From the IMG/VR virus record IMGVR_UViG_3300042317_001568, positions 1-64,000 of that record: DNA of 64,000 nt; one strand, written 5' to 3'. The notes beneath the pieces were generated by a model, which searched no databases, was not told the DNA's origin, and saw only the letters and a list, made by a program, of their open reading frames with translations. Both the position numbers and the translations under genes were made by a program. Shown here piece after piece: positions 4,459-54,384 of this stretch (positions within the stretch are counted from its first letter, which is position 1; each line of letters begins with the position of its first letter).

Positions 4459-4638
4459 ATGTCCCCGCGGAGAATCATTGGTGAATGCGCGTTAGTGGTC
4501 GGCGTGCTCGGCGGAACGGTTGTCGGCTTTTTAGCCGGCAGTCATTTCGTCGAACCGCAGATACAACTCGTGTTCGCTTTTATCGGCATGGCTCTTGGTG
4601 GAGCTTTTGTCGATATATGCTTAAGAGGAGGACAGTGA
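4459..4638 (+). CDS. Small two-TM membrane protein
   Basis: GGAGG RBS; two hydrophobic helices. Confidence 0.7.
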   Translation: MSPRRIIGECALVVGVLGGTVVGFLAGSHFVEPQIQLVFAFIGMALGGAFVDICLRGGQ

Positions 4639-5270
4639 TGTTTGCAAAGCTGTTGTTGATTGTCGTGTGCCTGACTGCCGTAGCTCACGGACAGAACCAG
4701 CCCACGCAGAAGGATATCGACCAGATGCGTGATTCGCTGGTCGCAAACTTCGACGCCCAGTCTCGCGAGGACGTCGATGCGATGATTGCGACGATCAGTC
4801 CGAAGGGTCAGCAGATGGCTGGCCCCACCGAGATGGCCGAGCTTCGGGAAGAATCCTTGAAACTCTTCGAGGAAACAAACCTGAAGCTACGGTTGGTCAG
4901 CCTGCACGTGTACGACTACTCGCCACCCAGCGTCAGCGGCTGCGCGTACGCCGACGTCGTGCAGCTCACGCTGCCGTCGGAGCATTCGTACGCGGACTTG
5001 GAGGAGTACCCGGCCGACATGAGCTCGCTCTGGCGGCACCACTCGGGGGCCTTGCCCACATCGCAGCTGGTGAAGTATGTTCTTCGGTTCGACTACGACC
5101 CGAAGGACCGCACGTGGAAACCGACGCGGATCGTGGAGCCGCCGAAGCCCGTGAGCAACTGGCCTGAGAACACTCAGGAAGTGATGCACGGCAAAGTGGC
5201 GGACCCGACAAGTCGGACCGGGGTGTGTTCAAACGGCAGATGTTCGAACAGGCTTACCAACAACCGGTAA
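4638..5270 (+). CDS. Secreted protein, possible NTF2/SnoaL-like fold
   Basis: GAGGAG RBS, signal peptide MFAKLLLIVVCLTAVAHG, then a helix-helix-beta pattern. Confidence 0.7.
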   Translation: MFAKLLLIVVCLTAVAHGQNQPTQKDIDQMRDSLVANFDAQSREDVDAMIATISPKGQQMAGPTEMAELREESLKLFEETNLKLRLVSLHVYDYSPPSVSGCAYADVVQLTLPSEHSYADLEEYPADMSSLWRHHSGALPTSQLVKYVLRFDYDPKDRTWKPTRIVEPPKPVSNWPENTQEVMHGKVADPTSRTGVCSNGRCSNRLTNNR

Positions 5271-5530
5271 GCGGTCGACTGGGCGACCTAAAATAGGACT
5301 TAAGCCTAGTGCGTGGGGAGCGCTAATCCGCTCCCCGATGTCTGCGTTCATAGTCGTTCATGATTGGCTGTGGCGTGGGTTATTGACACTCCTCGGCCTG
5401 CGTATGCCAACAGCCCTGCAAGGCTGCAAAAATACGTAGGCAGGCACGCCTGTGGTTGCAGCCGCAGTTTGGAAAGTCGCGCGCGTTATCGGGTTTCTCG
5501 GTGACGAAGTGTGGCGGCAGTGTCAGTCTC
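5271..5530 (+). ncRNA. Candidate structured RNA or leader upstream of tRNA-Lys
   Basis: No ORF. Hairpins 5315-5336 and 5396-5441, plus long-range pair TTGACACT(5383)/AGTGTCAG(5519). Confidence 0.4.
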
Positions 5531-9486: not shown

Positions 9487-9798
9487 ATGCGTATTTGGCT
9501 CGATGACGTTCGGCCCATGCCGGCTGAGTGGGACGTATGGCTCAGGACAGCCGAACAAGCTATTCTGGCTATCAAGCTTGGCGGCGTGACGGCTATTTCA
9601 CTGGACCACGATCTCGGCGACGAGTCTGCTAAGACCGGCTACGACGTGGCGAAGTTCATCGAAGAAGGAGCCTTTAAGGATACAATAGCTCCCATAGAAA
9701 TCTACGTCCACACCGCAAACGCGGCGGGCAGACAAAACATCATCCGTTCGATTCGCAAAGCCGAGAAGTTTTGGCATGAGCGACTCACGCGGACTTGA
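9487..9798 (+). CDS. Cyclic-phosphate-processing receiver-like domain protein
   Basis: IWLDDVR...ISLDHDLGD...TGYDVAK...VHTAN signature. Confidence 0.85.
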   Translation: MRIWLDDVRPMPAEWDVWLRTAEQAILAIKLGGVTAISLDHDLGDESAKTGYDVAKFIEEGAFKDTIAPIEIYVHTANAAGRQNIIRSIRKAEKFWHERLTRT

Positions 9799-11169: not shown

Positions 11170-11628
11170 ATGGACAAGCTGCTGTTTCTTGATGTCGATG
11201 GTGTGCTTAACAACGCCCGAATATTACGCGCAGAAAGTATTTTTGGGCTCGGTTGCAAGCAATTGAGTCTTCTAAAGCTTATCGTAGCTAACACTTGTTG
11301 TGAAATCGTACTCTCGTCAACGTGGCGACTGAACGACGAGCATAGAGAAGCGCTGCGTAACGCTTTTGAAGAACACTTAATACCTATGTGGATCGGGCAA
11401 ACGCCTGATTTGGGCATTTGCATGCGTCGTGACGAGATACTTTCGTGGATGATTGGGCATGAGGCGCCGGCCAAAGTCGTTATTCTCGACGACGACAAGG
11501 ACGCAATGCTGGTAAACGCGCCAGAACGCTTCCGAGAACGGCTTTTTGTGCACACTAACTTCGATCATGGTCTTACGTTAGACCACGCGGAGGCGATTTT
11601 GGAGTTTTTTAAGGAGGACTGTAAGTGA
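11170..11628 (+). CDS. HAD-superfamily phosphatase, RNA-repair (Swiss-army-knife) type
   Basis: LFLDVDGVLN (DxD), IVLSSTWR, VVILDDD, GLT. Confidence 0.85.
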   Translation: MDKLLFLDVDGVLNNARILRAESIFGLGCKQLSLLKLIVANTCCEIVLSSTWRLNDEHREALRNAFEEHLIPMWIGQTPDLGICMRRDEILSWMIGHEAPAKVVILDDDKDAMLVNAPERFRERLFVHTNFDHGLTLDHAEAILEFFKEDCK

Positions 11629-11837: not shown

Positions 11838-11843
11838 AAAGCA

Positions 11844-11942
11844 GTGTTTTGACGTAACTCCTTATCGCGCAGTAGTTTACGACCGCTGGCATATGCTATT
11901 TGTCGTAAATGTCTGTGCGGTAAGGAGTTACGCAAAATACAC
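11844..11942 (+). repeat. About 40-bp imperfect inverted repeat (long hairpin)
   Basis: Arms 11844-11883 and 11902-11942; several mismatches are G-U on the + strand. Confidence 0.85.
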
Positions 11943-12138: not shown

Positions 12139-12140
12139 GA

Positions 12141-13142
12141 ATTGACGGGGATAATAGGTATTGCCTATAGACCCGTCCCGGAACCCGCTACGGTGAAAGT
12201 GGGACCAGACCTGCAGCAGCAGTGTTCTGGGCTTAATACTGCGGGGAAGCGCCGCAGGGCTGATGATCGGCCGCCACAATCCGTCGGGTCCGTTGCAGTG
12301 GACCAGTGAGACGTTAAAACAGAATCTCGACTGCGCGGCCTAATACGCCGTAACGTTCTGGCTGTAAAGTCAGATCGTTATCCGCACCGCTACAGGTGTG
12401 GGTGAGCCGGCCCTTCTCGATGGGGTCTGGTTTCCCGATGGGGGTGTGCACTCATTAGAGCACCTCCATTAAGACGTTGTGGCGCCTCTTCTGCGCGACC
12501 AACGTACGGCCTGTGTCAATATAAGTCGTACCCAAGGTACGCTTTTGAAACAGGGTTTGCTGCTAATTCCTCCAGCGCAGCACACGGTTTTCGCAAGCCG
12601 TCCAATCGGGAGTCGATTCAGTGTAGGGAGACAAAGTAGCCATGGCGAAATGTTTCCAGCAGTGTTGACAGGGCGTAACGCACCCTGTGTGTGACACACT
12701 GCGATCTACAGCTGCAATCGGCTGCGAACCCATCTTCGGTTCGTGAGTGGAGGACAATACACGCTAGCCGCAAGGCTGGCACGTCGTTTCTTCCGACGTA
12801 GCGGAAGAGGTTTGACCAACAAGCCTAACTGTTGGTGATCGTATGTGGGTTAAACCACAAACGTTCGCGAGCCGCTCAGTCGCCAAAGTTCCAAGAGCCC
12901 TTAGTTGCGTTACGGAAGTGAAACGCAACGGCTAGCCGTGTAGCAGGAACGTGTATTAAGACACGTACACGGCACAATAAACGCCTACCACCGGGCGATA
13001 TGGCGTGGCTGCCGCACGAGGGAAGTAACGTGCGTGGGGACCGGCACCTAGCCGGGGCTGTGGACGCACAGTTGACGCTTAAATGGAAGACGCGGCGAGG
13101 TGCACCTCAAAGCGAGCCGGGTTCGATTCCCGGCATAGTGTC
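12141..13142 (+). ncRNA. Candidate giant structured ncRNA 1 (about 1 kb)
   Basis: No credible ORF; many hairpins and long-range helices; T-arm-like 3' end; promoter motif directly upstream. Boundaries are approximate. Confidence 0.65.
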
Positions 13143-13228
13143 TAGTTTTTTGGCAAGGTACCGTTCCCTGCCACCCCATCTGAGGGCTTTTGAACGGACG
13201 CGTGTCTCGAAAGAGAAAGGGGAGTGCT

Positions 13229-14259: not shown

Positions 14260-14886
14260 ATGGGAATTCTGGACACCAAGGCTGCCGTGGCGTGCACGGT
14301 TGCTCACGAGTCGATTCAGCAGATGCGGAAGTATGGCGACCGGCGCTATTACACGCACCCGCTGACGGTGGCCGCGCTCGTGCACACGCTGCCGGGCACG
14401 GACGAGGCGATGTTCGCTGCGGCGTGCCTCCATGACGTCATCGAAGACGTCTACCCGAAGAACCCCGCCTACGGCCCCGCGTGGGTTGCGAACAACTTCG
14501 GCGAGGAAGTGCTGCTGCTCGTTCATGAGCTCACCAACGAGTTCACGAAAGAGCGGTATCCCGACCTCAACCGCAACGAGCGGAAGCGGCGGGAGAGTCT
14601 GCGGCTCGCCGACATCTCCGACGCCGCGAAGGTTGTGAAGCAGGCAGACCTGTATCACAACAGCACGGAGATCAGCCCTGACACCCGCTTCTGGGGTCAA
14701 TGGTTGAAGGAGAAGAACGAGCTCGACGAGCTCATCGGCGCGTGGGAGGACCGCGAGTGCGGCTTCCTCACGGGTGGCGACGTCTGGAGTCTTGTCGGCT
14801 CTGGCGAGTTCAAGATGCTCGTCGCTACGGCGCACGAGATCGACGAGTTCTACAAGGTCGCCGACTGGGGCCTTGTGACTGCGTAA
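14260..14886 (+). CDS. HD-domain hydrolase, RelA/SpoT-HD (Mesh1/SAH-like)
   Basis: AH...Q-x-RK...Y-x-x-HP-x-x-VA...AA-x-LHDVIED...FG-x-EV-x-x-LV-x-ELT...VK-x-AD-x-x-HN. Confidence 0.85.
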   Translation: MGILDTKAAVACTVAHESIQQMRKYGDRRYYTHPLTVAALVHTLPGTDEAMFAAACLHDVIEDVYPKNPAYGPAWVANNFGEEVLLLVHELTNEFTKERYPDLNRNERKRRESLRLADISDAAKVVKQADLYHNSTEISPDTRFWGQWLKEKNELDELIGAWEDRECGFLTGGDVWSLVGSGEFKMLVATAHEIDEFYKVADWGLVTA

Positions 14887-15069: not shown

Positions 15070-15492
15070 ATGGCATCTATCTACACCGCCGTCCTCCTGA
15101 CCGAAGAGTCCCGCCAGAACCTGATCGCGTTCTACGGTCTCACGTCGTTCTACGCGGAGGGTTGGGTCATCAAGGCCCACCACATGACGATCGATACCAA
15201 GTCTGCGGATAAGGCCGGCGTCGCGGACTTGGTCGGCAAAGAGTTCACGATGGACGTGACCGCCGTCGGCAGGCTCATGGTGGACGACACCCGCGGCATC
15301 GTCGCCGTGACTGTCGAGACTGCGGCCCCGTCGAAAAACGCCATCAAGCACGTCACGGTGGCGCACGCGGATGGCGTCAAGCCTATGATGTCTAACAACA
15401 TCACCGACTGGCGGCCCGTCAAGCCGGGCACGCTCACGCTCACGGGCGTCGTGTGCATGCTTGAGTCGGCTCCCGTGCCGGCGAAGAGCTGA
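15070..15492 (+). CDS. 2H phosphoesterase (cyclic phosphodiesterase-like)
   Basis: Two H-x-T motifs (HHMTI, KHVTVA) with 2H spacing; AAGGAG RBS. Confidence 0.75.
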   Translation: MASIYTAVLLTEESRQNLIAFYGLTSFYAEGWVIKAHHMTIDTKSADKAGVADLVGKEFTMDVTAVGRLMVDDTRGIVAVTVETAAPSKNAIKHVTVAHADGVKPMMSNNITDWRPVKPGTLTLTGVVCMLESAPVPAKS

Positions 15493-15805: not shown

Positions 15806-16303
15806 GTGGATATTTTTCTAGACATAAAAAGGCAGCAAGAATACGCGAAACAGCTGGAAGACGGCGACAGGCGTAACGTGGAAGACTGGGCCCGCAACCA
15901 AGAGCGCCGTAATGAGGCAAAGCGCCGCGGCCTTTTTCAGCGCGATAAGCCCAAAGAGCGCCGCATTGCTATTTTTCAGCGCTGGCAAAAAATGCGTAAA
16001 GCGAGTGCCATCAAGCTGCGCGCCCCGGACGGCGACTCTAGGTTTTGTTTATGTAAATGCGGTCGGCCCAAGGCGTGCGCACAAACGCACTGCTACGACT
16101 GTCAGGACATGATGTTTATTGTCCGGCACAGGATACCAATGTCTGGCGCAGTAGAAGTCGAAAAGCGATATGGGCGAATATACGAAACGCCCCTGCTGCG
16201 CCACGACATCGACTACCGATCGTCTAGGTACGAGGACAGTGAGAACTTCGGTAGCCTCCACAATGTGATTCGGGCGATGGAAGACTCCCTAGCGTACGAT
16301 TAA
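15806..16303 (+). CDS. Hypothetical protein with a Cys cluster
   Basis: AAGGGAG RBS; CLCKC...CYDC. Confidence 0.65.
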   Translation: MDIFLDIKRQQEYAKQLEDGDRRNVEDWARNQERRNEAKRRGLFQRDKPKERRIAIFQRWQKMRKASAIKLRAPDGDSRFCLCKCGRPKACAQTHCYDCQDMMFIVRHRIPMSGAVEVEKRYGRIYETPLLRHDIDYRSSRYEDSENFGSLHNVIRAMEDSLAYD

Positions 16304-16305
16304 AC

Positions 16306-16387
16306 GCTAAATAGTCTCCAAAAGCCTGACATATACAGAAAATGCGGGTTTCTGCTGAGCTAAATATTCAGCAAAAACACGGCATAT
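16306..16387 (+). promoter_or_regulatory. Tandem bipartite promoter-like motifs, copies 5 and 6
   Basis: GCTAAAT-N15-GACATAT (16306-16334) and GCTAAAT-N15-GGCATAT (16359-16387). Confidence 0.7.
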
Positions 16388-16391
16388 CTAG

Positions 16392-17070
16392 TGCTCAGCG
16401 CGCTAGCTGTCGACGGCTACGCGCTAATTGACGTGAATTCGTTCTGAGCCTGCGCGGTGTACCATTGCTTGAACGGATGCTTCCGTGGTGATTCGAGCAG
16501 TGAGTAAAAGCTGCGCAGGCTTTTCCGTAAATACGTCCGCGGCAGGCAGTTAAGCCGCGTAGAAAACTGCCAATACACTCGACCTTCGCCTTGCGAGAAT
16601 GCGGCGAACAGAATCTGCCGTCACGGGCACCATCTTTGGTGGCTCGAAAGTTGGGCGATCATCGGCCCAAAGGCGGGATAGGACGCACACTATCCGCGCT
16701 ACGCGATTTGTAAATCCCAAAGTGGAAGGAGGAAATGTCGAATTCCCAAAGCAAGGAATTCCGTAGCAGGCTGTGTAAGACTGCGCAAAAAGCATTTCCA
16801 AGCGCCCCGGACCGCTAGCTCAAACACAACGACGCTAGAAGAGGGTTCGGTACCGGATGGGCCGGTCGTGATTCATAGCATAAACCTGCGTTTGTTACTT
16901 TGGTCGGCCAACCAAATAATAAACAAAGGCGCTACTGCAGTCGGTCGTACAACTGACTGTAGAGTAATCGCGTGACTGATGAGGATAGCAAACACGTAGT
17001 TGGGGAACTCGTAGCAGGTTAGCGTCTGCTGCGATGCTTCTTCCCAAAGGTGGTGCCCGTGACGGCAGTT
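16392..17070 (+). ncRNA. Candidate large structured ncRNA 2 (about 680 nt)
   Basis: No credible ORF; 25-bp long-range stem 16615-16639/17044-17068; many nested hairpins; tandem promoter motifs upstream. Confidence 0.65.
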
Positions 17071-17103
17071 GTTAGTTTAACCCCTAAGAAAGGATGGACT
17101 CTC

Positions 17104-17319
17104 ATGTTGTTTATTGGAATGCTCGGTGCGGTGTTCGTGCTCGGTGCGGTTGCTGGGACCATCAGCGACATGGTCAATACCGAAAAGCCTAAAATGGCCA
17201 CCACGTTTACTCGTGTTTCGACCAAGGTCACGAGCGGTATCGTCGACGTGGACCCGAATGGCAACATCATCAGGATCACCGACGCCTCCGGGCGCGTGGT
17301 CTATGAGGAGGGGGCTTAA
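17104..17319 (+). CDS. Small membrane-anchored protein
   Basis: AAGGA RBS; N-terminal TM segment. Confidence 0.7.
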   Translation: MLFIGMLGAVFVLGAVAGTISDMVNTEKPKMATTFTRVSTKVTSGIVDVDPNGNIIRITDASGRVVYEEGA

Positions 17320-17347
17320 CGCCCTTTCTTTTAGCTATCAGCGCCCA

Positions 17348-35507: not shown

Positions 35508-36542
35508 ATGGCCAAAGGACTCGACGTCGGTACCTCGTTTATTGTTCTTGCCGCGAACTCTTCTGCCCCCGCGAGTTTCACGGGTGACGAGACGTTTGAC
35601 TACGTTCAGTACAAAGAGTTCCGGGACGCGTTCTACGTCATTAAGCCTACGACCCCTGTAGCCACGAAAATGATCGAAAAGGGCCTGCAGGGCAAAGTCT
35701 TTGTCAAAGACGCCGACGGCACGTTTATCATTCTGGGCCAAGACGCTATTGAGAAAGCTGTCGAGCGCAACGACTCCGCCAAGCGTCCGATGTACCGCGG
35801 CGTCGTGTCGAGCAAAGAAAAAGAAGCGAAGCGCGTACTCGCCTACATTCTGAAACAAGTTTGTGGCAAGGCCGACGAGCCAAATGAGAAGCTCGTGTTC
35901 TGCATTCCAGCGCAGCCTGTAGACCAAGACGACGACGACTTTGACGTCGGCTACCACGAAGACGTGGTCCGGACTATTTTGGCTGAATGCGGCTACAGCG
36001 CGCGAGCCATCAATGAGGCCGAAGCGCTGTGCTACTCGGAGCTAGAGAGCGACGATTACACCGGCGTAGCGCTTTCCTGTGGCGCCGGCATGGTGAACTG
36101 CTGCGTTATGCTCAACGGCGAGCCTACGGTGATGTTCAGCACCACAAAGTCCGGCGACTGGATTGATCGCATGACCGCTGTAGCCGTTGGCGAACCAGAT
36201 AGCGTGGTGCAGGCTGAAAAAGAGAACGGCGAGTTTGTGATTGGCGAACAGAATGACAATCCAATTTTGGCGGCTGTGTCGAGCTACTACGAGCGCCTGA
36301 TCGATTACACAACAAAGAATCTTGCCGCTGCTATGACGGGCCACAAGCTGTTGCCGAAGTTCAAGAATCCGCTGCCGGTTGTCATTGCCGGCGGAACATC
36401 ACAGGCGGCGGGTTTTGTTGCGCTGTTTCAGAAGAAACTTGCTGACAATGAGTTTCCGCTCCCAGTCAGCGAAGTGCGTCACGCCAAAGACCCGCTGCAC
36501 GCTGTTGCTCGCGGCTGTCTAATCGCCGCAAAAGTTCTTTGA
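35508..36542 (+). CDS. Actin-like ATPase (ASKHA; MamK/MreB/ParM-related)
   Basis: GLDVGT (phosphate 1), INEAEA (connect 1), SCGAGMVN (phosphate 2), IAGGTS (adenosine), AVARG (connect 2). Confidence 0.85.
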   Translation: MAKGLDVGTSFIVLAANSSAPASFTGDETFDYVQYKEFRDAFYVIKPTTPVATKMIEKGLQGKVFVKDADGTFIILGQDAIEKAVERNDSAKRPMYRGVVSSKEKEAKRVLAYILKQVCGKADEPNEKLVFCIPAQPVDQDDDDFDVGYHEDVVRTILAECGYSARAINEAEALCYSELESDDYTGVALSCGAGMVNCCVMLNGEPTVMFSTTKSGDWIDRMTAVAVGEPDSVVQAEKENGEFVIGEQNDNPILAAVSSYYERLIDYTTKNLAAAMTGHKLLPKFKNPLPVVIAGGTSQAAGFVALFQKKLADNEFPLPVSEVRHAKDPLHAVARGCLIAAKVL

Positions 36543-36608: not shown

Positions 36609-37076
36609 ATGCGGCGACGGGCTAAGTTTGAAGGAATTATCATTGCGCGATACGGAAACATTAACGGACCCGACGAGCTGCAGAATTCACCAAAATTTGT
36701 CGAACAAACTTTAAAAGCGGGCTGGCACGTATGCGTCGAAGTGGTTTTCCACAACGGCGCATTTTTATTGCCCCACGCAGAGATTAACGGGCACTCTTTT
36801 ACGCCTGTCCCGCCGTCCTTTTTTTCTCGGCAGCGTGTGTGGGCGTGCGCAACAAATCCTGAAACGTTAGACGCGCTGTGCAATATTAATGCGCACTGCT
36901 TTATGTTTTCTGGAGAGCAGCCTACGCTGACGAGCGCGCATTTTATCTGGACGCCGACGCCACACGCGCTGACAGACCGCGGAATTGCCTATTTGCCTGA
37001 AACCGCCCCGCCGGACTGGCTTGAGAATTGTGAGCCAGCCGGCCTATGCAGTGACCAACCCGCGCAGTATATCTAA
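36609..37076 (+). CDS. Hypothetical protein, remotely GDPD-like
   Basis: IIARYGNINGP...EN.P...G.CSD; the usual HRG is altered. Confidence 0.55.
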   Translation: MRRRAKFEGIIIARYGNINGPDELQNSPKFVEQTLKAGWHVCVEVVFHNGAFLLPHAEINGHSFTPVPPSFFSRQRVWACATNPETLDALCNINAHCFMFSGEQPTLTSAHFIWTPTPHALTDRGIAYLPETAPPDWLENCEPAGLCSDQPAQYI

Positions 37077-37220
37077 GCGTAGTGGTCTGCGTTCGTTGAC
37101 AACTTGGCCGGCAAAAGCGGTTTTATTCGGGTTTATCGCTGCGCGATAAAACTGTTAAAATACGTGTGCGTCGAGAATTAGTTGTGGCGGTCAACTGGTT
37201 AGGGCTGTAGAACGACAGGG

Positions 37221-37430
37221 ATGTCTATTTTGCAGCTGGTGTCGTGGTCAGGTACTAGCCGAGAACACGATTGGAGGCACGGCGAATGCCGCACGAGACA
37301 ATTTTTTGTCTTCGAAAGTCGCCGTAAAGTCTCGATTTTTAATCGAGATACGGACTCGCGGAAGGGGATCGCGAGAATTCTCGACGCACACAAATCTTTA
37401 CCCGCCAACGGTTTAAACGATGTTAAATGA
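37221..37430 (+). CDS. Hypothetical protein
   Basis: Short ORF overlapping the next gene. Confidence 0.5.
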   Translation: MSILQLVSWSGTSREHDWRHGECRTRQFFVFESRRKVSIFNRDTDSRKGIARILDAHKSLPANGLNDVK

Positions 37431-37776: not shown

Positions 37777-37915
37777 TCAACTAAGTCTTTTGTCTTGGGT
37801 CTTCGCGGCAATTTGCGCGGGGCTCCTTTTTTTGGCGGCGGCTGCTTCGGCCAATTCCAGTCACGCCGATACACGCGCCACGAACACGGTAGTTGTATCC
37901 GCTCAGACAAAGTAG
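37742..37915 (+). CDS. Small membrane protein
   Basis: AGGGAG RBS; one TM segment. Confidence 0.5.
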   Translation: MKAIAIPQHYRNQLSLLSWVFAAICAGLLFLAAAASANSSHADTRATNTVVVSAQTK

Positions 37916-37925
37916 TGGTGCCGCC

Positions 37926-39311
37926 ATGGACGGCCTCTCCGTACTTGACCCGTCGGGCTGGGAGCCGACCAGCCTAAAGAAATGCGCCGCGTATGCGCAG
38001 GGTAATGCGCTAGGCTGGCTGAGCCGTTCTGATAAGCAAGCGAGCGTCAATCACCCGCTCGCCGGCCGCCTGTATTTAGCCAAAAGCGGGTGGCTGCTTC
38101 TTTCTGTCCCGAACGCCTTTGTGCGTGGCGTGTACGACGCCCTTGTTGCGCCGGGCGCTGAACTTCCGCTTGCCGGCACCATGAACGTGCCCAATGTCGA
38201 CGCGGGCGTCCTGAACGCCCATATTTCCGTAATGACTGCCGACGAGGTGCAGTCAATCGGCGCCGACAAGATTAACGAGCGCGGGCACATGTTTTACTAC
38301 GGCCTCGGCCCAGTGAAAGAGATTCCCGTTACCAGCATCGAAGGCGTCAGCAAAGTCTGGGTTGTGCAGGTAGCCAGCCCGACCCTCGCGGCTTTGCGCA
38401 AAAGCTACGGCCTGACCCCGCTACCGAAAGGAAACCACCCGTTCCACATCACTATTGCCGCTCGGCGCAAGCACGTGATGGGCAACAACACTGTCAGCAA
38501 ATTTGACACAGCCCAAGGCCGCGGCGAGCTAAAAGCCGCAGAACTTTCCCGTTCGGGACAAAAAGTTGCCCGCTCGGGACAAAACGACCTTTTACCGGGC
38601 GGAAAAGCCGACAATTTACCCGATCGGGATTTTTCTTCGTCTGCCTTAGCTGAAGGAGCTAAACATGAACACGAACACGTCACAAATGACCAAATCGCCA
38701 AAGAAATTGCCAAAGATCATTTGCTCGAAGACCCCACCTACTACGAAAAAGTAAAGAAGATCGAAAAAGCGGCCAGCCCCGTGTTGAAAATGCTGCGCGA
38801 GGCCAAAGAGCACTCTGATAACAAGCGCTACGAGCACAAGGCGCGCATTTTGCGGCAATTGATGTCACAGTCTCCGCAAGACTGGGTGATCGACGACAAT
38901 AAGCCCAAGTTCAAGGGTGTGACACATAAACCTACGAACTTCCGCCTGCACGCCGACCCGCGCAGCATTGATCCGAGAGTAAAAGCCGCTTACTTCAACA
39001 CCAACTCGCCTTATCGCAGCGTGTACGTTCAGGAGATGCTCAATCAGTTTAACCGGCGCATTCCGATTACGTACGATCACAACTTGCCGCTGTTTAAAAA
39101 CATCCAGAATCAGTTGCTAGAGGTCAAGAACCGCGGAGACTTTATTCTGCGCACGAGGCAGAACGCCGAGATGTACCGGGCGCATCTTGATCCGATGTAT
39201 CGCCAGCAGCGGGCGCTTGATGCGTTCCACAACCGCGACCAGCAGATGCCCATGCTCGACCGCGTGATTTCGCGACACGGTAACGACATTCTTGGCGCTG
39301 GAGGTGCGTGA
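37926..39311 (+). CDS. Modular protein: 2H-phosphoesterase-like domain, a module resembling DUF5661, and further modules
   Basis: NAHISV and FHITIA; EGAKHEHEH...AKEIAKDHL.EDP.YY. Confidence 0.7.
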   Translation: MDGLSVLDPSGWEPTSLKKCAAYAQGNALGWLSRSDKQASVNHPLAGRLYLAKSGWLLLSVPNAFVRGVYDALVAPGAELPLAGTMNVPNVDAGVLNAHISVMTADEVQSIGADKINERGHMFYYGLGPVKEIPVTSIEGVSKVWVVQVASPTLAALRKSYGLTPLPKGNHPFHITIAARRKHVMGNNTVSKFDTAQGRGELKAAELSRSGQKVARSGQNDLLPGGKADNLPDRDFSSSALAEGAKHEHEHVTNDQIAKEIAKDHLLEDPTYYEKVKKIEKAASPVLKMLREAKEHSDNKRYEHKARILRQLMSQSPQDWVIDDNKPKFKGVTHKPTNFRLHADPRSIDPRVKAAYFNTNSPYRSVYVQEMLNQFNRRIPITYDHNLPLFKNIQNQLLEVKNRGDFILRTRQNAEMYRAHLDPMYRQQRALDAFHNRDQQMPMLDRVISRHGNDILGAGGA

Positions 39312-47107: not shown

Positions 47108-50100
47108 ATGCCGAGCATTTTGCCGTCATCCGGTTTACAGCCGCCGGCACCACAACCTGCGCAGTACCGGGCATTCGGCGACGTACCGGCACTTCGAGAC
47201 AATATTTTTAACAACGCTTTGCAGAGCGCTCAAAGTATCGAGCCGATGCAAAACGATCTTTATACGCTGCGACTATCCGACGTCACTTACGACGGGCCTG
47301 AGCGGTTTACTAAAGCCGACCAGAAGAACGCTATTTTGACGCACGGCTCGCTGCACAGAAAAATGAGGGGCACATGGACTCTGCTGGACAACAAGACACA
47401 GAAGCCTGTTGCGACGAGGGCCGCTACGATTGCCAACGTGCCGTACCTAACGGACGCCGGTACGTTCGTCAATCGGGGGGTGGAGTACACGCTGGCGCAC
47501 CAACTGAGGCTGCGTCCCGGTATCTTCACACGCGAGAAAGAAAACGGGGAGCTGGAAGCCCACGTGAATGCGTTACCGGGCAAAGGCCGGTCGCACCGCT
47601 ATTATCTGGACCCAAAGACGGGGGTGTTCAAGATACAGATCGGCCAAGCGCAGATTCCGGTCATGCCGTTGTTAAAAGCGATGGGGATGCGGGACAACGA
47701 CATCCGGTCAGCGTGGGGGAACGAGATCACAGCCGCGAACATGGAGAAGGGGGACGCGGGGACGATCGACAAGTTGTACCAGCGCCTAGTGTACAAGCCG
47801 AAACCGGGGATCGACGAGCTGGGAAAGATCAAGGAGATAGCGCAGGAGTTCGCGAAGACGGAGTTCGACGAGGAAGTGACAAAAAGAACGCTCGGAAAGC
47901 CGTACAAGCAGCTGACTCCGGAAACGATCATGGACATAACGAAAAAGCTGATCGCGGTGAATCGGAAGGAGGCTGATTCCGACGACCGCGACAGCATGGC
48001 GTTCCAGCAGGTTTATGGCCCCGAAGATTTAATCGCTGAGCGTTTCGTAAAAGACAAAACTGGATTACGGCAGTTACTCTGGAAAGCAACCGCGAAAAAG
48101 TCGCTGGATCACATTCCGTCGGGCGTGTTCAACAAAGGCATTAACGCCGCCCTGATTGGCTCGGGTCTTGGTTCGTCGCTGGAAGAAATCAATCCGGCAG
48201 AAATCTTTGATCACCAGACTCGTGTAACGCGCCTAGGCGAAGGCGGCATCGGTTCGATCGACGCCATTCCCGCCGAGTCCCGCAGCGTGCAACCGAGTCA
48301 TTTCGGTTTTATCGACTATTTGCGTACGCCAGAGTCCGGCAAAGTTGGCGTCGATATGCGGTTTGCCGCCGGTGCCCGAAAAAGCCCGACAAATATTCAT
48401 ACGTTCGTGGTGCCGGTAAAAAACGTTCACACCGGCGACACGGTCTACAAGACGCCGCAAGAACTAGCCGACACGCCGCTGGTATTTCCGGGCGAAGAGC
48501 GCAGCGACCTGCCCATGGTAGCCGCTTTGCAGAACGGCAAAATTAAATACGTGCCTAAGAAAGACGCGCAGTTCATGTTGCCGAGCATGGACAACTCACT
48601 CTCCATGCTTTCAAACATGGTGCCGATGAAGTCGATGTCTAAGGGCCAGCGCGTCATCATGGGTAGCCGCATGTTTACGCAGGCACTGCCCCTAGTAAAC
48701 GCTGAATCGCCGTTTGTGCAGTCAGCAACGAGCGACGACCCGAATATTTCTTATGAAGACAAGATGGGCGAGCATCTTGGTGCCGTAAAAGCCTCCGCGC
48801 CCGGAATTGTCGAGAAAGTGACCCCCGACGAGATCATCATTAAAGGCGCAGACGGCAAACGACAGTCTATCGAGCTTTACAACGACATGCCGTTTAATCG
48901 CAAGACGTTGTGGACGCAAAGGCCGACTGTGCAGCCCGGAGATCAGATTACGCCCGGGCAATTACTCGCCACGTCGAACTTTACCGATAAAAACGGCACG
49001 ACGGCGCTGGGTTTAAATCTTCGCGTCGGGTATGTCCCTTTCCGCGGCCGTAACTATGAAGACGGCGTGGTTATCAGCGAATCAGCCGCCAAGCGCCTGA
49101 CCAGCGAGCACATGTATCAGAACGAAGTCGAGTTTGACGACAACACGCATGTCGGCAAGCGGGCGTTTGTGAGTTTGTTCCCGGGCGTTTACGACAAAAA
49201 GATGCTGGAGCGCTTTGACGACAACGGCGCAGTGAAAAAAGGCCAAGTCGTCAATTTCGGCGACCCGCTGGTGTTAATGGCCAAGAAGCGCGAAGCGGTG
49301 TACGGCAAAGTACACCGAGGCCGCGCTGGCAGCTTCGCTAACGAGACGATTACGTGGGACCATCATTCTCCCGGCGTAGTCACGGACGTTGGCGTAACAA
49401 AAAACGGTGTGAACGTAGTAGTAAAAGCGCAATCGCCGATGGAAGTCGGCGACAAGCTTTCTGGGCGATTTGGCGATAAAGGCGTTGTGGCTGAGATAGT
49501 CCCGGATCATCAGATGCCCCAAGACGCCGACGGGCGTGCGATGGAGGTGCTGGTTAGCCCGCTGGGTTTAATCAGCCGCGTAAATCCGTCTCAGGTTATC
49601 GAGGCTGCGCTGGGTAAGATTTCAGCCAAGACGGGTAAAGCATATAAGGTCAAAGATTTCGATCAGGACACAGACCTCGTTGACTTTGCGCAGGGAGAGT
49701 TAGCCAAGCACGGGCTGTCAGACACAGAAGACTTGACAGACCCGGAGACTGGTAGAAAGATTCGGGGCGTGCTGACGGGCTCCCGGTTCTACATGAAGCT
49801 CCACCATACGGCTGAATCAAAGGGTCAGGGGCGGTCTACGGGCAGTTACACAGCTGAAGGCACGCCGGCCAAGGGCGGTTCCGAAGGCGCCAAGCGCGTC
49901 GGCATGCTCGATCTTGGCGCGCTGTTAAGCCACGGTGCCGGAAAAGTTATCCGCGACGCCAAGATGGTGCGCGGCCAAGCTAATCCGGAGTATTGGGCGC
50001 AGTTCATGGCTGGCTATGACCCGCCGCTGCCCAAGGTCCCGCACGTCTACGAGAAGTTTGTCAGTCAACTGCGTGGCGCTGGCGTTAACACGGTAAAGTC

Positions 50101-51511
50101 CGGCTCCAAGGTTAATATCATGGCCCTCACCGATAAAGACATCGATGAGCTGGCCGGCGACCGAGAAATCCAGAACACTGAGACCGTGGACTGGAAAGGT
50201 AACTTAAAGCCGAAGCAGGGCGGCCTGTTTGACGAAAAGCTCACCGGCGGCCACAACGGCACGCGATGGTCAAAAGTCACGCTCCACGAGCCGATGCCCA
50301 ATCCTGTGATGGAAGAGCCCATTCGCCGCGTGCTGGGCCTTACAGAAAAGGAATTCCGCGGCGTGCTGGCCGGCGAAGAAAAGCTTTACGACAAGACAGG
50401 CCCGGCGGCTATTCGTACGGCGCTCGAAAACATCAACGTACCGAAAGCTATTGAGCAGGCTCGGCAGGATATCCAGTCTGGGCGCAAAACACTGCGTGAC
50501 GCCGCTGTCCGCCGGCTCGGGTTCTTGAAGGGCTCTGAAACCACGGGTGTTCATCCAAAAGACTGGATGCTGACCAAAATGCCGGTCCTGCCGCCAATGT
50601 TCCGGCCGGTGTCGCAAATCGGCTCCAAAAAGATGCAGCTGATCGACGACGCCAATTATCTCTACAAAGAACTGCTTGAATCTAACTCAGTGCTTAAAGA
50701 AGCTACCGGCGTGCTCGGTAACGTAGGCAACGAGCGCTTGGCCCTGTACGACGCCATGAAAGGCGTTACGGGCCTCGGCGACCCTGTAAACCCCAAACAC
50801 GTCGAAAAGAACGTCCGGGGTTATTTACGCAAGATATTCGGCGACAGCCCCAAGTTCGGCACCATGCAGCGCAAACTGCTGTCAAGCACGGTAGACCTTG
50901 TCGGCCGGGCGGTGATTACCCCCAACTCCGACCTAGACATGGACGAGGTTGCCCTGCCGGAAGAAAAGGCGTGGGATATTTACAAACCGTTTATTGTCCG
51001 CGGCCTTGTGCGTCGCGGTATGCCCCGGATGACCGCGCTCCAGTCCGTTGAAGACAAAAACAAGATCGCGTTCGACGAGATGCATAAACAAATGAATTCG
51101 CGGCCGATTGTTATTAATCGTGCCCCGGTTTTACACCGATATGGTATGATGGCCTTCTACCCCCGGCTTACGAAAAACAAGGTTATGGAGGTCAATCCGG
51201 TCATCACCAAGGGCTTTAACGCCGACTTCGACGGTGACGCGATGCAGTATCACGTCCCCAGTACCGAAGAGGCGGCCAAAGAGGCAATTGAGAAAATGCT
51301 GCCCAGCAAAAATCTGTTTGCGGCGGCTTCTTTCAAGGCGCACTACATGCCGACGATGGATTACCACACAGGCATCTATCTCGCGTCGAGTCGCATTAAC
51401 TCTAAAGCTAAGCCCCGTGTTTACCGAAATAAGAAAGACGCCGTCCGCGCGTATCGTGCCGGCGAAATTGATGTGGACACGCCGGTACACATCGTGGAAG
51501 ATAAAGACTGA
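47108..51511 (+). CDS. rpoBC: Phage multisubunit RNA polymerase: full beta fused to the N-terminal part of beta' (contains the catalytic site)
   Basis: Beta motifs VPYLTDAGTF, GSRMFTQALPL, GRNYEDGVVIS, GDKLSGRFGDKGVV, YMKLHH. Beta' motifs VLPPMFRP, KLLSSTVDLVGRAVI, NRAPVLHR, NADFDGD. Confidence 0.95.
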   Translation: MPSILPSSGLQPPAPQPAQYRAFGDVPALRDNIFNNALQSAQSIEPMQNDLYTLRLSDVTYDGPERFTKADQKNAILTHGSLHRKMRGTWTLLDNKTQKPVATRAATIANVPYLTDAGTFVNRGVEYTLAHQLRLRPGIFTREKENGELEAHVNALPGKGRSHRYYLDPKTGVFKIQIGQAQIPVMPLLKAMGMRDNDIRSAWGNEITAANMEKGDAGTIDKLYQRLVYKPKPGIDELGKIKEIAQEFAKTEFDEEVTKRTLGKPYKQLTPETIMDITKKLIAVNRKEADSDDRDSMAFQQVYGPEDLIAERFVKDKTGLRQLLWKATAKKSLDHIPSGVFNKGINAALIGSGLGSSLEEINPAEIFDHQTRVTRLGEGGIGSIDAIPAESRSVQPSHFGFIDYLRTPESGKVGVDMRFAAGARKSPTNIHTFVVPVKNVHTGDTVYKTPQELADTPLVFPGEERSDLPMVAALQNGKIKYVPKKDAQFMLPSMDNSLSMLSNMVPMKSMSKGQRVIMGSRMFTQALPLVNAESPFVQSATSDDPNISYEDKMGEHLGAVKASAPGIVEKVTPDEIIIKGADGKRQSIELYNDMPFNRKTLWTQRPTVQPGDQITPGQLLATSNFTDKNGTTALGLNLRVGYVPFRGRNYEDGVVISESAAKRLTSEHMYQNEVEFDDNTHVGKRAFVSLFPGVYDKKMLERFDDNGAVKKGQVVNFGDPLVLMAKKREAVYGKVHRGRAGSFANETITWDHHSPGVVTDVGVTKNGVNVVVKAQSPMEVGDKLSGRFGDKGVVAEIVPDHQMPQDADGRAMEVLVSPLGLISRVNPSQVIEAALGKISAKTGKAYKVKDFDQDTDLVDFAQGELAKHGLSDTEDLTDPETGRKIRGVLTGSRFYMKLHHTAESKGQGRSTGSYTAEGTPAKGGSEGAKRVGMLDLGALLSHGAGKVIRDAKMVRGQANPEYWAQFMAGYDPPLPKVPHVYEKFVSQLRGAGVNTVKSGSKVNIMALTDKDIDELAGDREIQNTETVDWKGNLKPKQGGLFDEKLTGGHNGTRWSKVTLHEPMPNPVMEEPIRRVLGLTEKEFRGVLAGEEKLYDKTGPAAIRTALENINVPKAIEQARQDIQSGRKTLRDAAVRRLGFLKGSETTGVHPKDWMLTKMPVLPPMFRPVSQIGSKKMQLIDDANYLYKELLESNSVLKEATGVLGNVGNERLALYDAMKGVTGLGDPVNPKHVEKNVRGYLRKIFGDSPKFGTMQRKLLSSTVDLVGRAVITPNSDLDMDEVALPEEKAWDIYKPFIVRGLVRRGMPRMTALQSVEDKNKIAFDEMHKQMNSRPIVINRAPVLHRYGMMAFYPRLTKNKVMEVNPVITKGFNADFDGDAMQYHVPSTEEAAKEAIEKMLPSKNLFAAASFKAHYMPTMDYHTGIYLASSRINSKAKPRVYRNKKDAVRAYRAGEIDVDTPVHIVEDKD

Positions 51512-52473: not shown

Positions 52474-54384
52474 ATGCTGAAAACGACACTCGGGCAAATC
52501 ATGATCAACGACGCGCTACCGCAGGAGATGCGGGACTACAATCGCGTCATGGATAAGAAGACGCTGAGCTCGTTATCGACCGAGCTCGCCAAGAATTATC
52601 CCGAACAGTACCGCGAAGTTACCAAGAAGCTGTTCGATGTTGGGCGAGACGCCTCCTACTCAACAGGCGGTTTGACGTTCTCCCTGCGAGACATCAAACA
52701 AACGCTCGCCGGTCAGCGGGCTAAGCTGGAAGTGCGAAAGCAGCTTCGCGGCATTATGGCCACGCCGGGCTTGTCTGAAAAAGACCGCAACTTAAAAATC
52801 CTCCAGCTGGCGGCGAACACGCAAAACAAGCTGCTTGAAGAAGTTTTTAACGAGGCGCAAGATCAAGACAACCCGCTCGCGACCCAAGTCAAATCGGCTA
52901 TTCGCGGCAATAAGTACAGTCTTAGCTCACTTATTGGCGCCGACATGCTTTACGTCGACCACAAGGACGAGCCGATTCCGATCCCCGTTCTTAACAACTA
53001 TGGTAGGGGTCTTACACCCGCAGAATATTTCGCGGGCGCCTTCGGCGCCCGCAAGGGTCTAATTGACACGAAGACAGCCACGGCTGACGCCGGGTTCTAC
53101 GGCAAGCAATTGACGCAAATGGCGCACCGATTACTGGTGACGGCTGACGACGAAGACGACGACGCGCACAAGGACGCTTTAGAAGTCAGAGGGTTCCCAA
53201 CCGATGTCGATGACGCCGACAATGAGGGCGCGCTTCTTGCCCGCGGTGCGGGCCCCTATAAACGAAATACAGTGCTGACGCCAAAAATCCTAAAAGACCT
53301 GAAACAGATGGGCGTAAAGGACATCCTTGTTCGTAGTCCATTGGTCGGCGGCCCCGGCGATGGCGGCGTGTTCGGTAAGGACGTCGGCTACCGCGAAAAG
53401 GGCCGCATTCCTCCAATTGGCGACTATGTCGGTATTGCCGCCGCCCAAGCGTTAAGCGAGCCGGTGTCGCAGTCGCAATTGTCGTCAAAGCACTCCGGCG
53501 GTGTTGGTGGCGCGCGGGCCATTGGCGGCTTCAAAGCTATTAACGCGCTGGTGCAGGTTCCCAAAACTTATCCTGACGGCGCGACACACGCGCAGCGCGA
53601 CGGAGCGGTTCAAGAAGTACGCCCCGCGGCTCAGGGCGGCTTTTACGTGCGCGTTGACGGAGAAGATCATTACATCCGCGCCGATCAAAACGTGTCTGTC
53701 AAAAAGGGCGACCCGATCGAAGCCGGCGACGTGCTTTCGGACGGCATGCCCAACCCGTCTGAGGTCGTACGGCATAAAGGCGTCGGCGAGGGGCGTCGGT
53801 ACTTCGTGGGCGCCATGCGTGACGTGTTAAAAAATAGCGGCATTACACCGCACCGACGAAACATCGAACTGGTGGCCCGCGGGCTGATCAATCATGTGCG
53901 GTTAACTGACGAATACGGCAGTTACGCCCCAGATGACGTCGTGCCGTATTCGACGTTAGAGCGCGACTGGCAGCCGAGAGAAGGCGCTGTCTCTGGCGCG
54001 CCCTCTTCGTTAAAGGGGCATTACTTGGAAAAACCGGTGCTGCACTACTCGGTCGGCACAAAGATTGGTAAGGGCGTAATTGACAATATGAGCCGCTACG
54101 GAATTAACAACGTGCAGGCCCACAGAAACCCGCCGCCGTTCCAGCCAGAAATGGTCCGCGGCATGGCGAACATTTCCAACGACCCGGACTGGATGACGCG
54201 CATGCTTGGCTCCTACCAAGAACGCGGATTCTTAAACAGCGTGCACCGGGGACTAAAAAGCGACACAAGCGGCAGTAGTTATGTGCCGGCCCTTGCCCGC
54301 GGCGAACAATTCGGGCTTTCTGGCCCCACAAGCGGCTGGAATCCGGCAACAACTAGGATAGACAGCCAAAACACTGTAAATTAG
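52474..54384 (+). CDS. rpoC: Phage RNA polymerase beta' C-terminal part
   Basis: KTTLG, bridge helix GARKGLIDT..TADAG, trigger loop IAAAQALSEP...KHSGG, RRNIELVAR. Confidence 0.92.
   Translation: MLKTTLGQIMINDALPQEMRDYNRVMDKKTLSSLSTELAKNYPEQYREVTKKLFDVGRDASYSTGGLTFSLRDIKQTLAGQRAKLEVRKQLRGIMATPGLSEKDRNLKILQLAANTQNKLLEEVFNEAQDQDNPLATQVKSAIRGNKYSLSSLIGADMLYVDHKDEPIPIPVLNNYGRGLTPAEYFAGAFGARKGLIDTKTATADAGFYGKQLTQMAHRLLVTADDEDDDAHKDALEVRGFPTDVDDADNEGALLARGAGPYKRNTVLTPKILKDLKQMGVKDILVRSPLVGGPGDGGVFGKDVGYREKGRIPPIGDYVGIAAAQALSEPVSQSQLSSKHSGGVGGARAIGGFKAINALVQVPKTYPDGATHAQRDGAVQEVRPAAQGGFYVRVDGEDHYIRADQNVSVKKGDPIEAGDVLSDGMPNPSEVVRHKGVGEGRRYFVGAMRDVLKNSGITPHRRNIELVARGLINHVRLTDEYGSYAPDDVVPYSTLERDWQPREGAVSGAPSSLKGHYLEKPVLHYSVGTKIGKGVIDNMSRYGINNVQAHRNPPPFQPEMVRGMANISNDPDWMTRMLGSYQERGFLNSVHRGLKSDTSGSSYVPALARGEQFGLSGPTSGWNPATTRIDSQNTVN

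What the first reader, a model, noticed from the sequence alone, without database searches (positions are those of the whole stretch)
16392..17070. Second large structured RNA candidate closed by a 25-bp long-range stem
Seen: about 680 nt without a credible ORF behind two tandem promoter motifs. CTGCCGTCACGGGCACCATCTTTGG (16615-16639) pairs with CCAAAGGTGGTGCCCGTGACGGCAG (17044-17068) as 24 Watson-Crick pairs plus one G-U, enclosing 404 nt. Enclosed hairpins include TTGGGC/GCCCAA, GGATAG/CTATCC, GAATTCC/GGAATTC, CTGCAGTCGGT/ACTGACTGTAG and GTAGCAG/CTGCTGC. A 5' domain has AGCGCG/CGCGCT and AGCCTGCGC/GCGCAGGCT. TTGGG at 17000 competes for the same CCCAA, a possible switch. Inference: an independent ornate ncRNA, an RNase III-excised or circularised RNA, or a retron-like a1/a2-bounded RNA whose reverse transcriptase lies outside the window. 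Two such RNAs under one promoter class may form a single RNA-based system.
Basis: partly seen in the sequence, partly recalled or inferred. Interest (0 to 1): 0.85.

Follow-up and report, generated by a model that had tools for sequence, protein, structure and literature searches.

The report
New large structured RNA, jumbo phage
An uncultured jumbo phage carries a roughly 455-nt, 16-helix RNA domain that matches no described RNA family, keeps its fold through compensatory mutations in related phages, and always sits just upstream of one small membrane-protein gene; its function is unknown.

Summary

Homologues came from eight further distinct metagenomic contigs (six full-length), which with the window fall into two clades about 75% identical. 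On the 7-sequence alignment a 159-pair, 16-helix consensus keeps 96.8% of cells paired. Thirty-three pairs change on both sides, against 1-6 when partners are slid. Unpaired positions are more conserved than paired ones, 1-2-nt indels rule out coding, and 13-17 G-U pairs place the RNA on the + strand.

No Rfam family matches at E<=10. The conserved unit is only the stem-closed domain. The 5' domain varies from 227 nt to about 19 nt.

The RNA lies behind a conserved phage promoter motif and about 35 nt upstream of a conserved 71-aa membrane-protein gene, with no terminator between them. RNA and gene occur together and are absent together.

Retron, MITE, hammerhead, RNase P and group I readings are not supported. 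An invertible DNA segment is unlikely.

Best reading: a new, lineage-restricted ornate phage RNA in a tRNA/tmRNA/RNA-repair island, probably released by cleavage of the stem. A giant cis-acting leader is the main rival.

The parts
16307..16334 (+). Phage promoter-like motif, copy 1 (CTAAAT-N17-CATAT)
   Evidence: Seven copies in the window against 0.48 expected, all on the + strand. Conserved at the same place in L011, L051, L053 and L009.
16360..16387 (+). Phage promoter-like motif, copy 2, the one nearest the RNA
   Evidence: Present before the RNA in every relative whose contig reaches that far, including clade B, where it lies about 19 nt before P1.
16388..16614 (+).
   Evidence: About 227 nt in the window, about 214 nt in L011, about 76 nt in L052 and about 19 nt in L009/L050. 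It is therefore dispensable for the conserved unit.
16615..17068 (+). Conserved stem-closed RNA domain (454 nt, 16 helices)
   Evidence: Alignment A4 of 7 sequences. 159 pairs, 96.8% of cells paired, 33 pairs with compensatory change against 1-6 in slid controls, 0 of 500 shuffles reach this. No Rfam match at E<=10.
16615..16639 (+). P1 5' arm
   Evidence: Five of its 25 pairs covary, three of them within clade A.
17044..17068 (+). P1 3' arm
16698..16723 (+). Long-range helix H4, 5' strand (pairs with 16975-17000); closes the central multi-helix core
   Evidence: 22 pairs, 5 with compensatory change, 98.7% paired.
16975..17000 (+). H4 3' strand, containing the invariant CTGATGAGG
   Evidence: The CTGATGAGG segment pairs with ATCCCAAAGT with covariation, so it is not a hammerhead core.
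16867..16972 (+). Most conserved subdomain (H12-H15), preceded by hairpin H11 at 16852-16866
   Evidence: Covariance model R1, built from 16851-16973, finds only the known homologues (128-145 bits) and nothing in more distant relatives.
17002..17043 (+). Hairpin H16, abutting P1 directly (possible coaxial stack)
   Evidence: 17 pairs, 6 with compensatory change.
17069..17103 (+). Conserved linker with Shine-Dalgarno AAGGA
   Evidence: Alignment A1. Left unpaired in the centroid fold of the window. The fold of L009 likewise shows no pairing between this linker and the RNA domain.
17104..17319 (+). Co-transcribed 71-aa protein: N-terminal hydrophobic helix, invariant C-terminus resembling one YD/RHS repeat unit
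   Evidence: The family is confined to this lineage in 1.84 billion representatives. Absent from relatives that lack the RNA.
17312..17344 (+). Weak terminator-like hairpin plus U-tract and the TTTTAGCTATCAGCGC box that precedes the next promoter
   Evidence: Repeat family D2. Not called by the terminator scan, so its role as the end of the unit is inferred.

Best explanation
The element is a previously undescribed structured RNA, encoded on the + strand, of a lineage of uncultured jumbo phages that carry their own multisubunit RNA polymerase. SHOWN: a 454-nt domain of 16 helices closed by a 25-bp stem is conserved through compensatory changes. Its loops and junctions are more conserved than its stems. 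It is non-coding. It lies behind a conserved phage promoter motif and about 35 nt upstream of a conserved 71-aa membrane-protein gene, with no terminator between. RNA and gene are found together, and both are missing from more distant relatives. INFERRED: the RNA is made as the 5' part of that transcript and folds into a compact self-contained module, since the distance from promoter to stem is free to vary. The long, near-perfect P1 duplex is cut by a double-strand-specific RNase (host RNase III). This would release a stable RNA of about 410-450 nt and a separate short-leader mRNA. The released RNA would then act through its three-dimensional fold, as a scaffold, decoy or self-assembling particle. 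That would put it in the same broad class as the ornate phage RNAs GOLLD and ROOL, within this phage's tRNA/tmRNA/RNA-repair gene island.
For: Structure: 33 covarying pairs against 1-6 in slid controls, and 96.8% of cells paired. Compensatory events fall on at least three branches: 4 within clade A, 3 within clade B, 33 between clades. Independent single-sequence folds of the window and L009 give the same architecture, with z-scores of -5.8 and -6.5. Strand: 13-17 G-U pairs, and the + strand is 44 kcal/mol more stable. Constraint beyond pairing: unpaired columns differ at 24.6% and paired columns at 32%. Non-coding: 1-2-nt indels and no conserved frame. Modularity: clade B keeps only the stem-closed domain. 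P1 keeps its 25-bp length in both clades. Context: tRNAs, tmRNA and a Pistol ribozyme; cREC, HAD_SAK_2, HD and 2H RNA-repair-type domains. GOLLD and ROOL are phage RNAs that often lie near tRNA islands (bioRxiv 10.1101/2024.12.08.627333).
Against: There are no transcript data, so ends, processing and stability are all untested. Unlike RNA 1 and the RNA of L013, which have their own terminators, this RNA has none. It is tightly linked to one gene, which fits a cis-acting role equally well. Only 9 distinct sequences in two clades were found (7 in the alignment), so covariation power is limited. Helices H7 and H8 are poorly supported in clade B. No RNase III gene was found in the window. Cleavage would depend on a host enzyme, and the host is unknown.
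Confidence: 0.45

Rival explanations
1. A giant cis-acting 5' leader. The folded domain stays on the mRNA and controls the stability or translation of the small membrane-protein gene. It might do this by sensing a ligand, protein or tRNA, or as a 5' stabiliser or ribosome standby platform.
For: No terminator between RNA and ORF. The linker and Shine-Dalgarno sequence are conserved and at a fixed distance. RNA and ORF are present together in all 9 distinct homologues and absent together in L013-L020. The protein family is confined to the same lineage.
Against: At 454 nt and 16 helices it is far larger than the cis-regulators I know of (own knowledge). The folds show neither pairing between the Shine-Dalgarno region and the RNA domain nor an alternative terminator. 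The proposed TTGGG/CCCAA switch has no comparative support.
Confidence: 0.3
2. A new large ribozyme, for example a self-processing or RNA-repair-related catalyst.
For: Large RNAs with strongly conserved junction nucleotides are often catalytic (own knowledge). The phage already uses a Pistol ribozyme. The island is rich in domains that process RNA ends.
Against: No match to any Rfam ribozyme model at E<=10. The CTGATGAGG motif is part of a covarying helix, not a hammerhead core. No candidate cleavage site is identified.
Confidence: 0.08
3. A DNA-level invertible segment (inverton) bounded by 25-bp inverted repeats and flipped by a recombinase.
For: The end of contig L012 reads 5' flank, then the repeat, then the reverse complement of the interior next to the 3' arm. 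That is the junction an inversion would create. Repeats that recombine would also stay complementary to each other.
Against: Every other contig (at least 12, from independent samples) has the same orientation. Twenty-eight covarying pairs lie outside the repeats and are strand-specific. No recombinase domain was found among the neighbours. The L012 junction lies 29 nt from a contig end and is a typical assembly or fold-back artefact at a perfect repeat.
Confidence: 0.04
4. A retron-like msr/msd RNA bounded by a1/a2 repeats, or a MITE or other mobile element.
For: Only the terminal inverted repeat.
Against: No reverse transcriptase among the 60 window ORFs scanned. The downstream gene is a 71-aa membrane protein. 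The element is single-copy in the window and in a 205-kb contig. It sits at a fixed syntenic position in relatives 75% identical. The sequences directly flanking the arms are not a direct repeat, so there is no target-site duplication.
Confidence: 0.02

Closest known systems
GOLLD and ROOL large ornate RNAs of phages and prophages
   Same: Phage-encoded RNAs of several hundred nucleotides with many helices and strongly conserved junctions. They are located in or near tRNA islands and have no known protein partner or function.
   Different: No covariance-model match to either, and a different secondary structure. RNA 2 is closed by a 25-bp terminal stem, lacks its own terminator, is tied to a small ORF, and is known from only one phage lineage.
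RNase III processing stems: flanks of 16S/23S rRNA precursors, and phage T7 and lambda leader sites (own knowledge)
   Same: A long, near-perfect duplex formed by sequences 5' and 3' of a structured RNA inside a longer transcript, immediately upstream of an mRNA.
   Different: Cleavage has not been tested here. The host and its RNase III are unknown.
Long structured 5' leaders of small membrane-protein or toxin mRNAs (hok-type fold-back mRNAs) and T-box leaders (own knowledge)
   Same: A structured RNA immediately upstream of a small hydrophobic-protein gene on the same transcript.
   Different: Several-fold larger. No antisense RNA, no sequestration of the ribosome-binding site, and no T-box match.
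Retron msr/msd non-coding RNA
   Same: Terminal inverted repeats (a1/a2-like).
   Different: No adjacent reverse transcriptase. The element is much larger and the stem much longer than in the retrons I know of (own knowledge).
Invertible DNA switches (Hin/Gin/Cin-type)
   Same: Inverted repeats flanking a few hundred base pairs in a phage, plus one contig end with an inversion-type junction.
   Different: No invertase found, orientation otherwise fixed, and internal strand-specific RNA covariation.

Membership tests
Any Rfam 15 family (including GOLLD, ROOL, RNase P, group I/II introns, hammerhead, T-box, 6S, HEARO) | Covariance-model match | tested here: not met
   No hit at gathering score in the window. 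At E<=10 on 16200-17200 there were only two chance-level hits, to a snoRNA and a microRNA model. Nothing at E<=10 for the clade-B homologue.
GOLLD / ROOL | Phage-encoded and located near a tRNA island | tested here: met
   Seven tRNAs and a tmRNA lie at 5.5-10.3 kb, and the RNA at 16.6 kb lies in the stretch (4.4-17.4 kb) where all seven copies of the promoter motif occur. This is a contextual resemblance only.
Retron | Reverse transcriptase gene next to the non-coding RNA | tested here: not met
   Pfam scans of 60 window ORFs found no reverse transcriptase domain. The rest of the roughly 205-kb genome could not be read.
Retron | Terminal a1/a2 inverted repeats | tested here: met
   A 25-bp repeat is present, but this feature is not specific to retrons.
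Retron | Branching G and msDNA production | not testable with these tools
   Needs an experiment.
MITE / transposon | Multiple copies and target-site duplication | tested here: not met
   Single copy in the window and one match per 205-kb contig. The flanking bases are not a direct repeat. Same syntenic site in diverged relatives.
Inverton | Both orientations present in populations | tested here: inconclusive
   One contig end (L012) shows an inversion-type junction. All other contigs share one orientation. Reads are not available.
Inverton | Site-specific recombinase nearby | tested here: not met
   No recombinase domain in neighbouring ORFs by Pfam or PHROGs.
Hammerhead ribozyme | CUGANGA ... 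GAAA core flanked by three stems | tested here: not met
   CTGATGAGG is present, but it pairs in helix H4 with covariation. There is no stem II or GAAA arrangement, and no model match.
Cis-regulatory leader / riboswitch | Located in the 5' UTR of the regulated gene | tested here: met
   The promoter motif lies upstream, the ORF starts 35 nt downstream, and no terminator lies between.
Cis-regulatory leader / riboswitch | Expression platform: alternative terminator or sequestration of the ribosome-binding site | tested here: not met
   The Shine-Dalgarno region is not paired with the RNA domain in the folds of the window or L009. No conserved alternative pairing was found.
RNase III substrate | At least about 20 bp of uninterrupted duplex | tested here: met
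   P1 is 25 bp in both clades, with at most one mismatch.
RNase III substrate | Cleavage by RNase III | not testable with these tools
   Needs in-vitro cleavage, or a comparison of rnc+ and rnc- strains.

The most novel reading that the evidence does not exclude
RNA 2 is a new class of functional ornate RNA, either a catalytic RNA or a self-assembling RNA-only or RNA-protein particle. Jumbo phages with their own RNA polymerase would deploy it, together with tRNAs, tmRNA, a second giant RNA and RNA-repair enzymes, to protect or reprogram the RNA pool during infection. Its partner small membrane protein would be part of the same device.
Probability: 0.15. Interest if true: 0.85.

Novelty: new variant of a known kind. 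Interest (0 to 1): 0.6.

Why it matters
Bacterial and phage RNAs longer than 400 nt with this much conserved structure are few. To my knowledge (own knowledge), those understood so far are ribozymes, ribonucleoprotein scaffolds or, as recently shown for GOLLD and ROOL, self-assembling cages. This candidate has unusually clean comparative support for its size. Its setting points to RNA-centred infection biology: tRNAs, tmRNA, a Pistol ribozyme, a second RNA of about 1 kb, several RNA-repair domains and a phage RNA polymerase with its own promoter motif. The strict linkage to one small membrane protein gives a concrete experimental handle that GOLLD and ROOL lack. The narrow distribution limits how general the finding is.

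Tried and rejected
- **Rfam scans.** Gathering and E<=10 thresholds on the window region, the RNA 1 region and the clade-B homologue gave nothing meaningful.
- **Cultured phage genomes.** blastn against 50,697 phage records gave no match. The phage's RNA polymerase is only 23-27% identical to its nearest cultured relatives.
- **Wider homologue searches.** These gave only copies identical to the window or chance hits:
  - four motif patterns on viral contigs, metagenome contigs and GTDB genomes;
  - covariance model R1 on all fetched loci;
  - profile nhmmer searches.
- **The 1.1-1.2-kb gene-free gaps in more distant relatives (L013-L020).** They hold a different RNA with its own promoter and terminator. 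It shows no detectable similarity to RNA 2 or RNA 1.
- **RNA 1 to RNA 2 base-pairing.** The longest complement is 8 nt. Shuffles give 8-13 nt. Whole-length duplexfold was uninformative.
- **Function of the small protein.** No PHROG family was found. The only Pfam hit is a sub-threshold RHS-repeat match. An HMM search of 1.84 billion representatives found only this lineage plus large YD/RHS-repeat proteins.
- **Hammerhead reading of CTGATGAGG.** Rejected.
- **Coding, under any genetic code.** Rejected because of 1-2-nt indels between and within clades.

Full report
**Observation.** The sequence at 16392-17070 is as described.
- The arms 16615-16639 and 17044-17068 are 25 nt, 96% complementary and 404 nt apart. 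They form the best long-range inverted repeat in the window.
- The single non-canonical position is a U-G pair on the + strand.
- The region folds far better than shuffled controls. The z-score is -8.3 on the + strand and -6.8 on the - strand, and the + strand is 44 kcal/mol more stable.
- The promoter motif CTAAAT-N17-CATAT occurs seven times in the window, all on the + strand, against 0.48 expected. Two copies lie at 16307 and 16360.
- No ORF longer than 83 aa overlaps the region.

**Genome context.** Every ORF that matched a family or a homologue lies on the + strand.
- The window carries seven tRNAs, a tmRNA and a Pistol ribozyme.
- It has several domains typical of RNA-repair systems: cREC_REC, HAD_SAK_2, HD, a 2H-like protein and 2H-SAK.
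- It encodes a split multisubunit RNA polymerase.
- Identical DNA occurs on IMG/VR contigs of up to 205 kb.
- This is therefore an uncultured jumbo phage, only distantly related to cultured ones.

**Homologues.**
- Proteins flanking the region led to diverged relatives.
- RNA 2 is present in the window and in L051, L011, L052, L053 and L056 (clade A, 89-99% identical).
- It is also present in L009/L010, L050 and L055 (clade B, about 75% identical).
- In clade B, similarity begins exactly at the 5' arm and ends just past the 3' arm. The promoter lies about 19 nt upstream of the stem.
- The leader between promoter and stem is about 227, 214, 76 or 19 nt in different phages.

**Structure.**
- On the 7-sequence alignment A4, RNAalifold gives 159 pairs in 16 helices.
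- 96.8% of cells are standard pairs.
- Thirty-three pairs show changes on both sides, against 1-6 when partners are slid by 1-3 columns. No shuffle out of 500 reaches this.
- Compensatory events occur within clade A (4, three of them in P1), within clade B (3) and between clades (33), so they fall on several branches.
- Unpaired columns are more conserved than paired ones (24.6% against 32% different).
- The fold contains 13-17 G-U pairs that would be A-C mismatches on the other strand.
- Single-sequence folds of the window and L009 recover the same architecture.
- Indels of 1-2 nt between and within clades exclude a conserved reading frame under any genetic code.
- Helices H7 and H8 are weakly supported in clade B, probably because of misalignment.
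- A candidate loop-loop contact (16683-16687 with 16772-16776) changes from ACGCA/UGUGU to AUAUA/UGUAU. It rests on a single clade split.

**Identity.**
- No Rfam 15 family matches, at gathering score or at E<=10, for either clade.
- That excludes membership of GOLLD, ROOL, RNase P, group I/II introns, hammerhead, T-box and the other described families.
- Motif scans of viral, metagenome and GTDB genome collections found no further relatives. A covariance model of the most conserved subdomain also found none.
- The family is confined to one phage lineage in the collections I could reach.

**Transcription unit.**
- The domain is followed, 35 nt later, by a conserved Shine-Dalgarno sequence and a 71-aa ORF. 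No terminator-like site lies between them, apart from the internal hairpin H16, which lacks a U-tract.
- The protein has an N-terminal hydrophobic helix and an invariant C-terminus that resembles one YD/RHS repeat.
- In a search of 1.84 billion representatives, the family is found only in this lineage.
- More distant relatives (L013-L020) lack both the RNA and the ORF within the roughly 10 kb fetched.
- The two therefore form one inherited module.

**Mechanism.**
- Shown: a conserved, strand-specific, non-coding fold, with sequence constraint on junctions and loops, promoter-proximal and co-transcribed with the small gene.
- Inferred: the self-contained, stem-closed design and the 25-bp near-perfect duplex suggest release by a double-strand-specific RNase. 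This would parallel rRNA precursors and phage T7 or lambda leader sites (own knowledge).
- That would yield a stable folded RNA that acts through its shape. This would place it in the same broad class as GOLLD and ROOL, which are phage RNAs near tRNA islands and assemble into cages.
- I give this reading 0.45.
- The main rival (0.3) is a giant cis-acting leader for the membrane-protein gene. The missing terminator and the strict linkage favour it. The size of the domain and the absence of any expression platform in the folds count against it.
- A new ribozyme (0.08) cannot be excluded.

**Rejected or unlikely readings.**
- Retron: no reverse transcriptase among 60 window ORFs, and an unrelated downstream gene.
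- MITE: single copy, syntenic, no target duplication.
- Hammerhead: the CTGATGAGG segment is part of covarying helix H4.
- TTGGG/CCCAA switch: no comparative support.
- Inverton: one contig end (L012) has an inversion-type junction at the repeat. All other contigs share one orientation, no recombinase is nearby, and 28 covarying pairs lie inside the segment. I rate it 0.04 and regard the junction as a probable assembly or fold-back artefact.

**RNA 1 and RNA 2.**
- RNA 1 (about 12139-13160) is also highly structured, with z = -5.8.
- It lies behind the same promoter motif and is conserved in L009, which also has RNA 2.
- The same motif also precedes protein genes.
- The two RNAs have no complementarity beyond chance.
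- A joint system is possible but not shown.

**Verdict.** This is a real and well-supported new structured RNA of unknown function, in a narrow phage lineage. It is a new variant within the known kind of large ornate phage RNAs. Interest 0.6.

Noticed in passing
window 5273-5343 (+): A Pistol self-cleaving ribozyme (Rfam 58 bits, gathering score 34.5) lies directly after ORF 4485-5270 and upstream of tRNA-Lys (5531). It probably separates the mRNA from the tRNA part of one transcript.
   Followed up: no
window 12139-13160 (+): 'RNA 1' is a gene-free stretch of about 1 kb behind promoter motif 12111. Its fold z-score is -5.8 and it is conserved in L009 569-1910. It ends in a tRNA T-arm-like CCGGGTTCGATTCCCGG (13117-13135), with weak sub-threshold hits to Y RNA and mascRNA models. 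It lies just downstream of a HAD_SAK_2 RNA-repair domain gene.
   Followed up: partly
L013 5574-6660; L017 6244-7330: More distant relatives carry a different non-coding unit of about 1.08 kb in the slot occupied by RNA 2. It has the same promoter motif and a clear intrinsic terminator, and it contains GGGTTCGAATCCC. It shows no detectable similarity to RNA 2 or RNA 1.
   Followed up: partly
window 9487-9798, 11170-11628, 14260-14886, 15070-15492, 37893-39311: A cluster of RNA-repair-type domains (cREC_REC, HAD_SAK_2, HD, 2H-like, 2H-SAK plus DUF5661) is interspersed with the tRNAs, the tmRNA and the large RNAs.
   Followed up: partly
window 47108-51511 and 52474-54384: A phage multisubunit RNA polymerase: a 1467-aa fusion of beta with the N-terminal part of beta', followed by a separate beta' C-terminal part. 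The CTAAAT-N17-CATAT motif may be its promoter. All seven copies lie between 4.4 and 17.4 kb.
   Followed up: no
L012 1109-1163: The contig end reads 5' flank, then the 25-nt repeat, then the reverse complement of the interior next to the 3' arm. This is either an inversion junction or an assembly or fold-back artefact at a perfect inverted repeat.
   Followed up: partly
window 16666, 16716, 16745, 17043: The heptamer CCCAAAG occurs four times inside the 454-nt RNA, out of 13 occurrences in the whole window on both strands. About 0.03 would be expected in a stretch of that length. It is only partly conserved in clade B (CCYAAAG, CCCUAAG, CCCGAGG).
   Followed up: partly
window 37154-37179 / 37376-37401: A 26-nt inverted repeat, 85% complementary, bounds 196 nt in the intergenic gap 37076-37420. 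It may be another structured element.
   Followed up: no
window 11848-11937: A 90-nt near-perfect hairpin follows the ORF that ends at 11838. After it come a T-run and the TTTTTAGCTAATAGCGCC box. It gives a spurious microRNA-model hit.
   Followed up: no
window 35508-36542: An actin-like protein (Pfam Volactin, E = 5.5e-61) is encoded by the phage.
   Followed up: no
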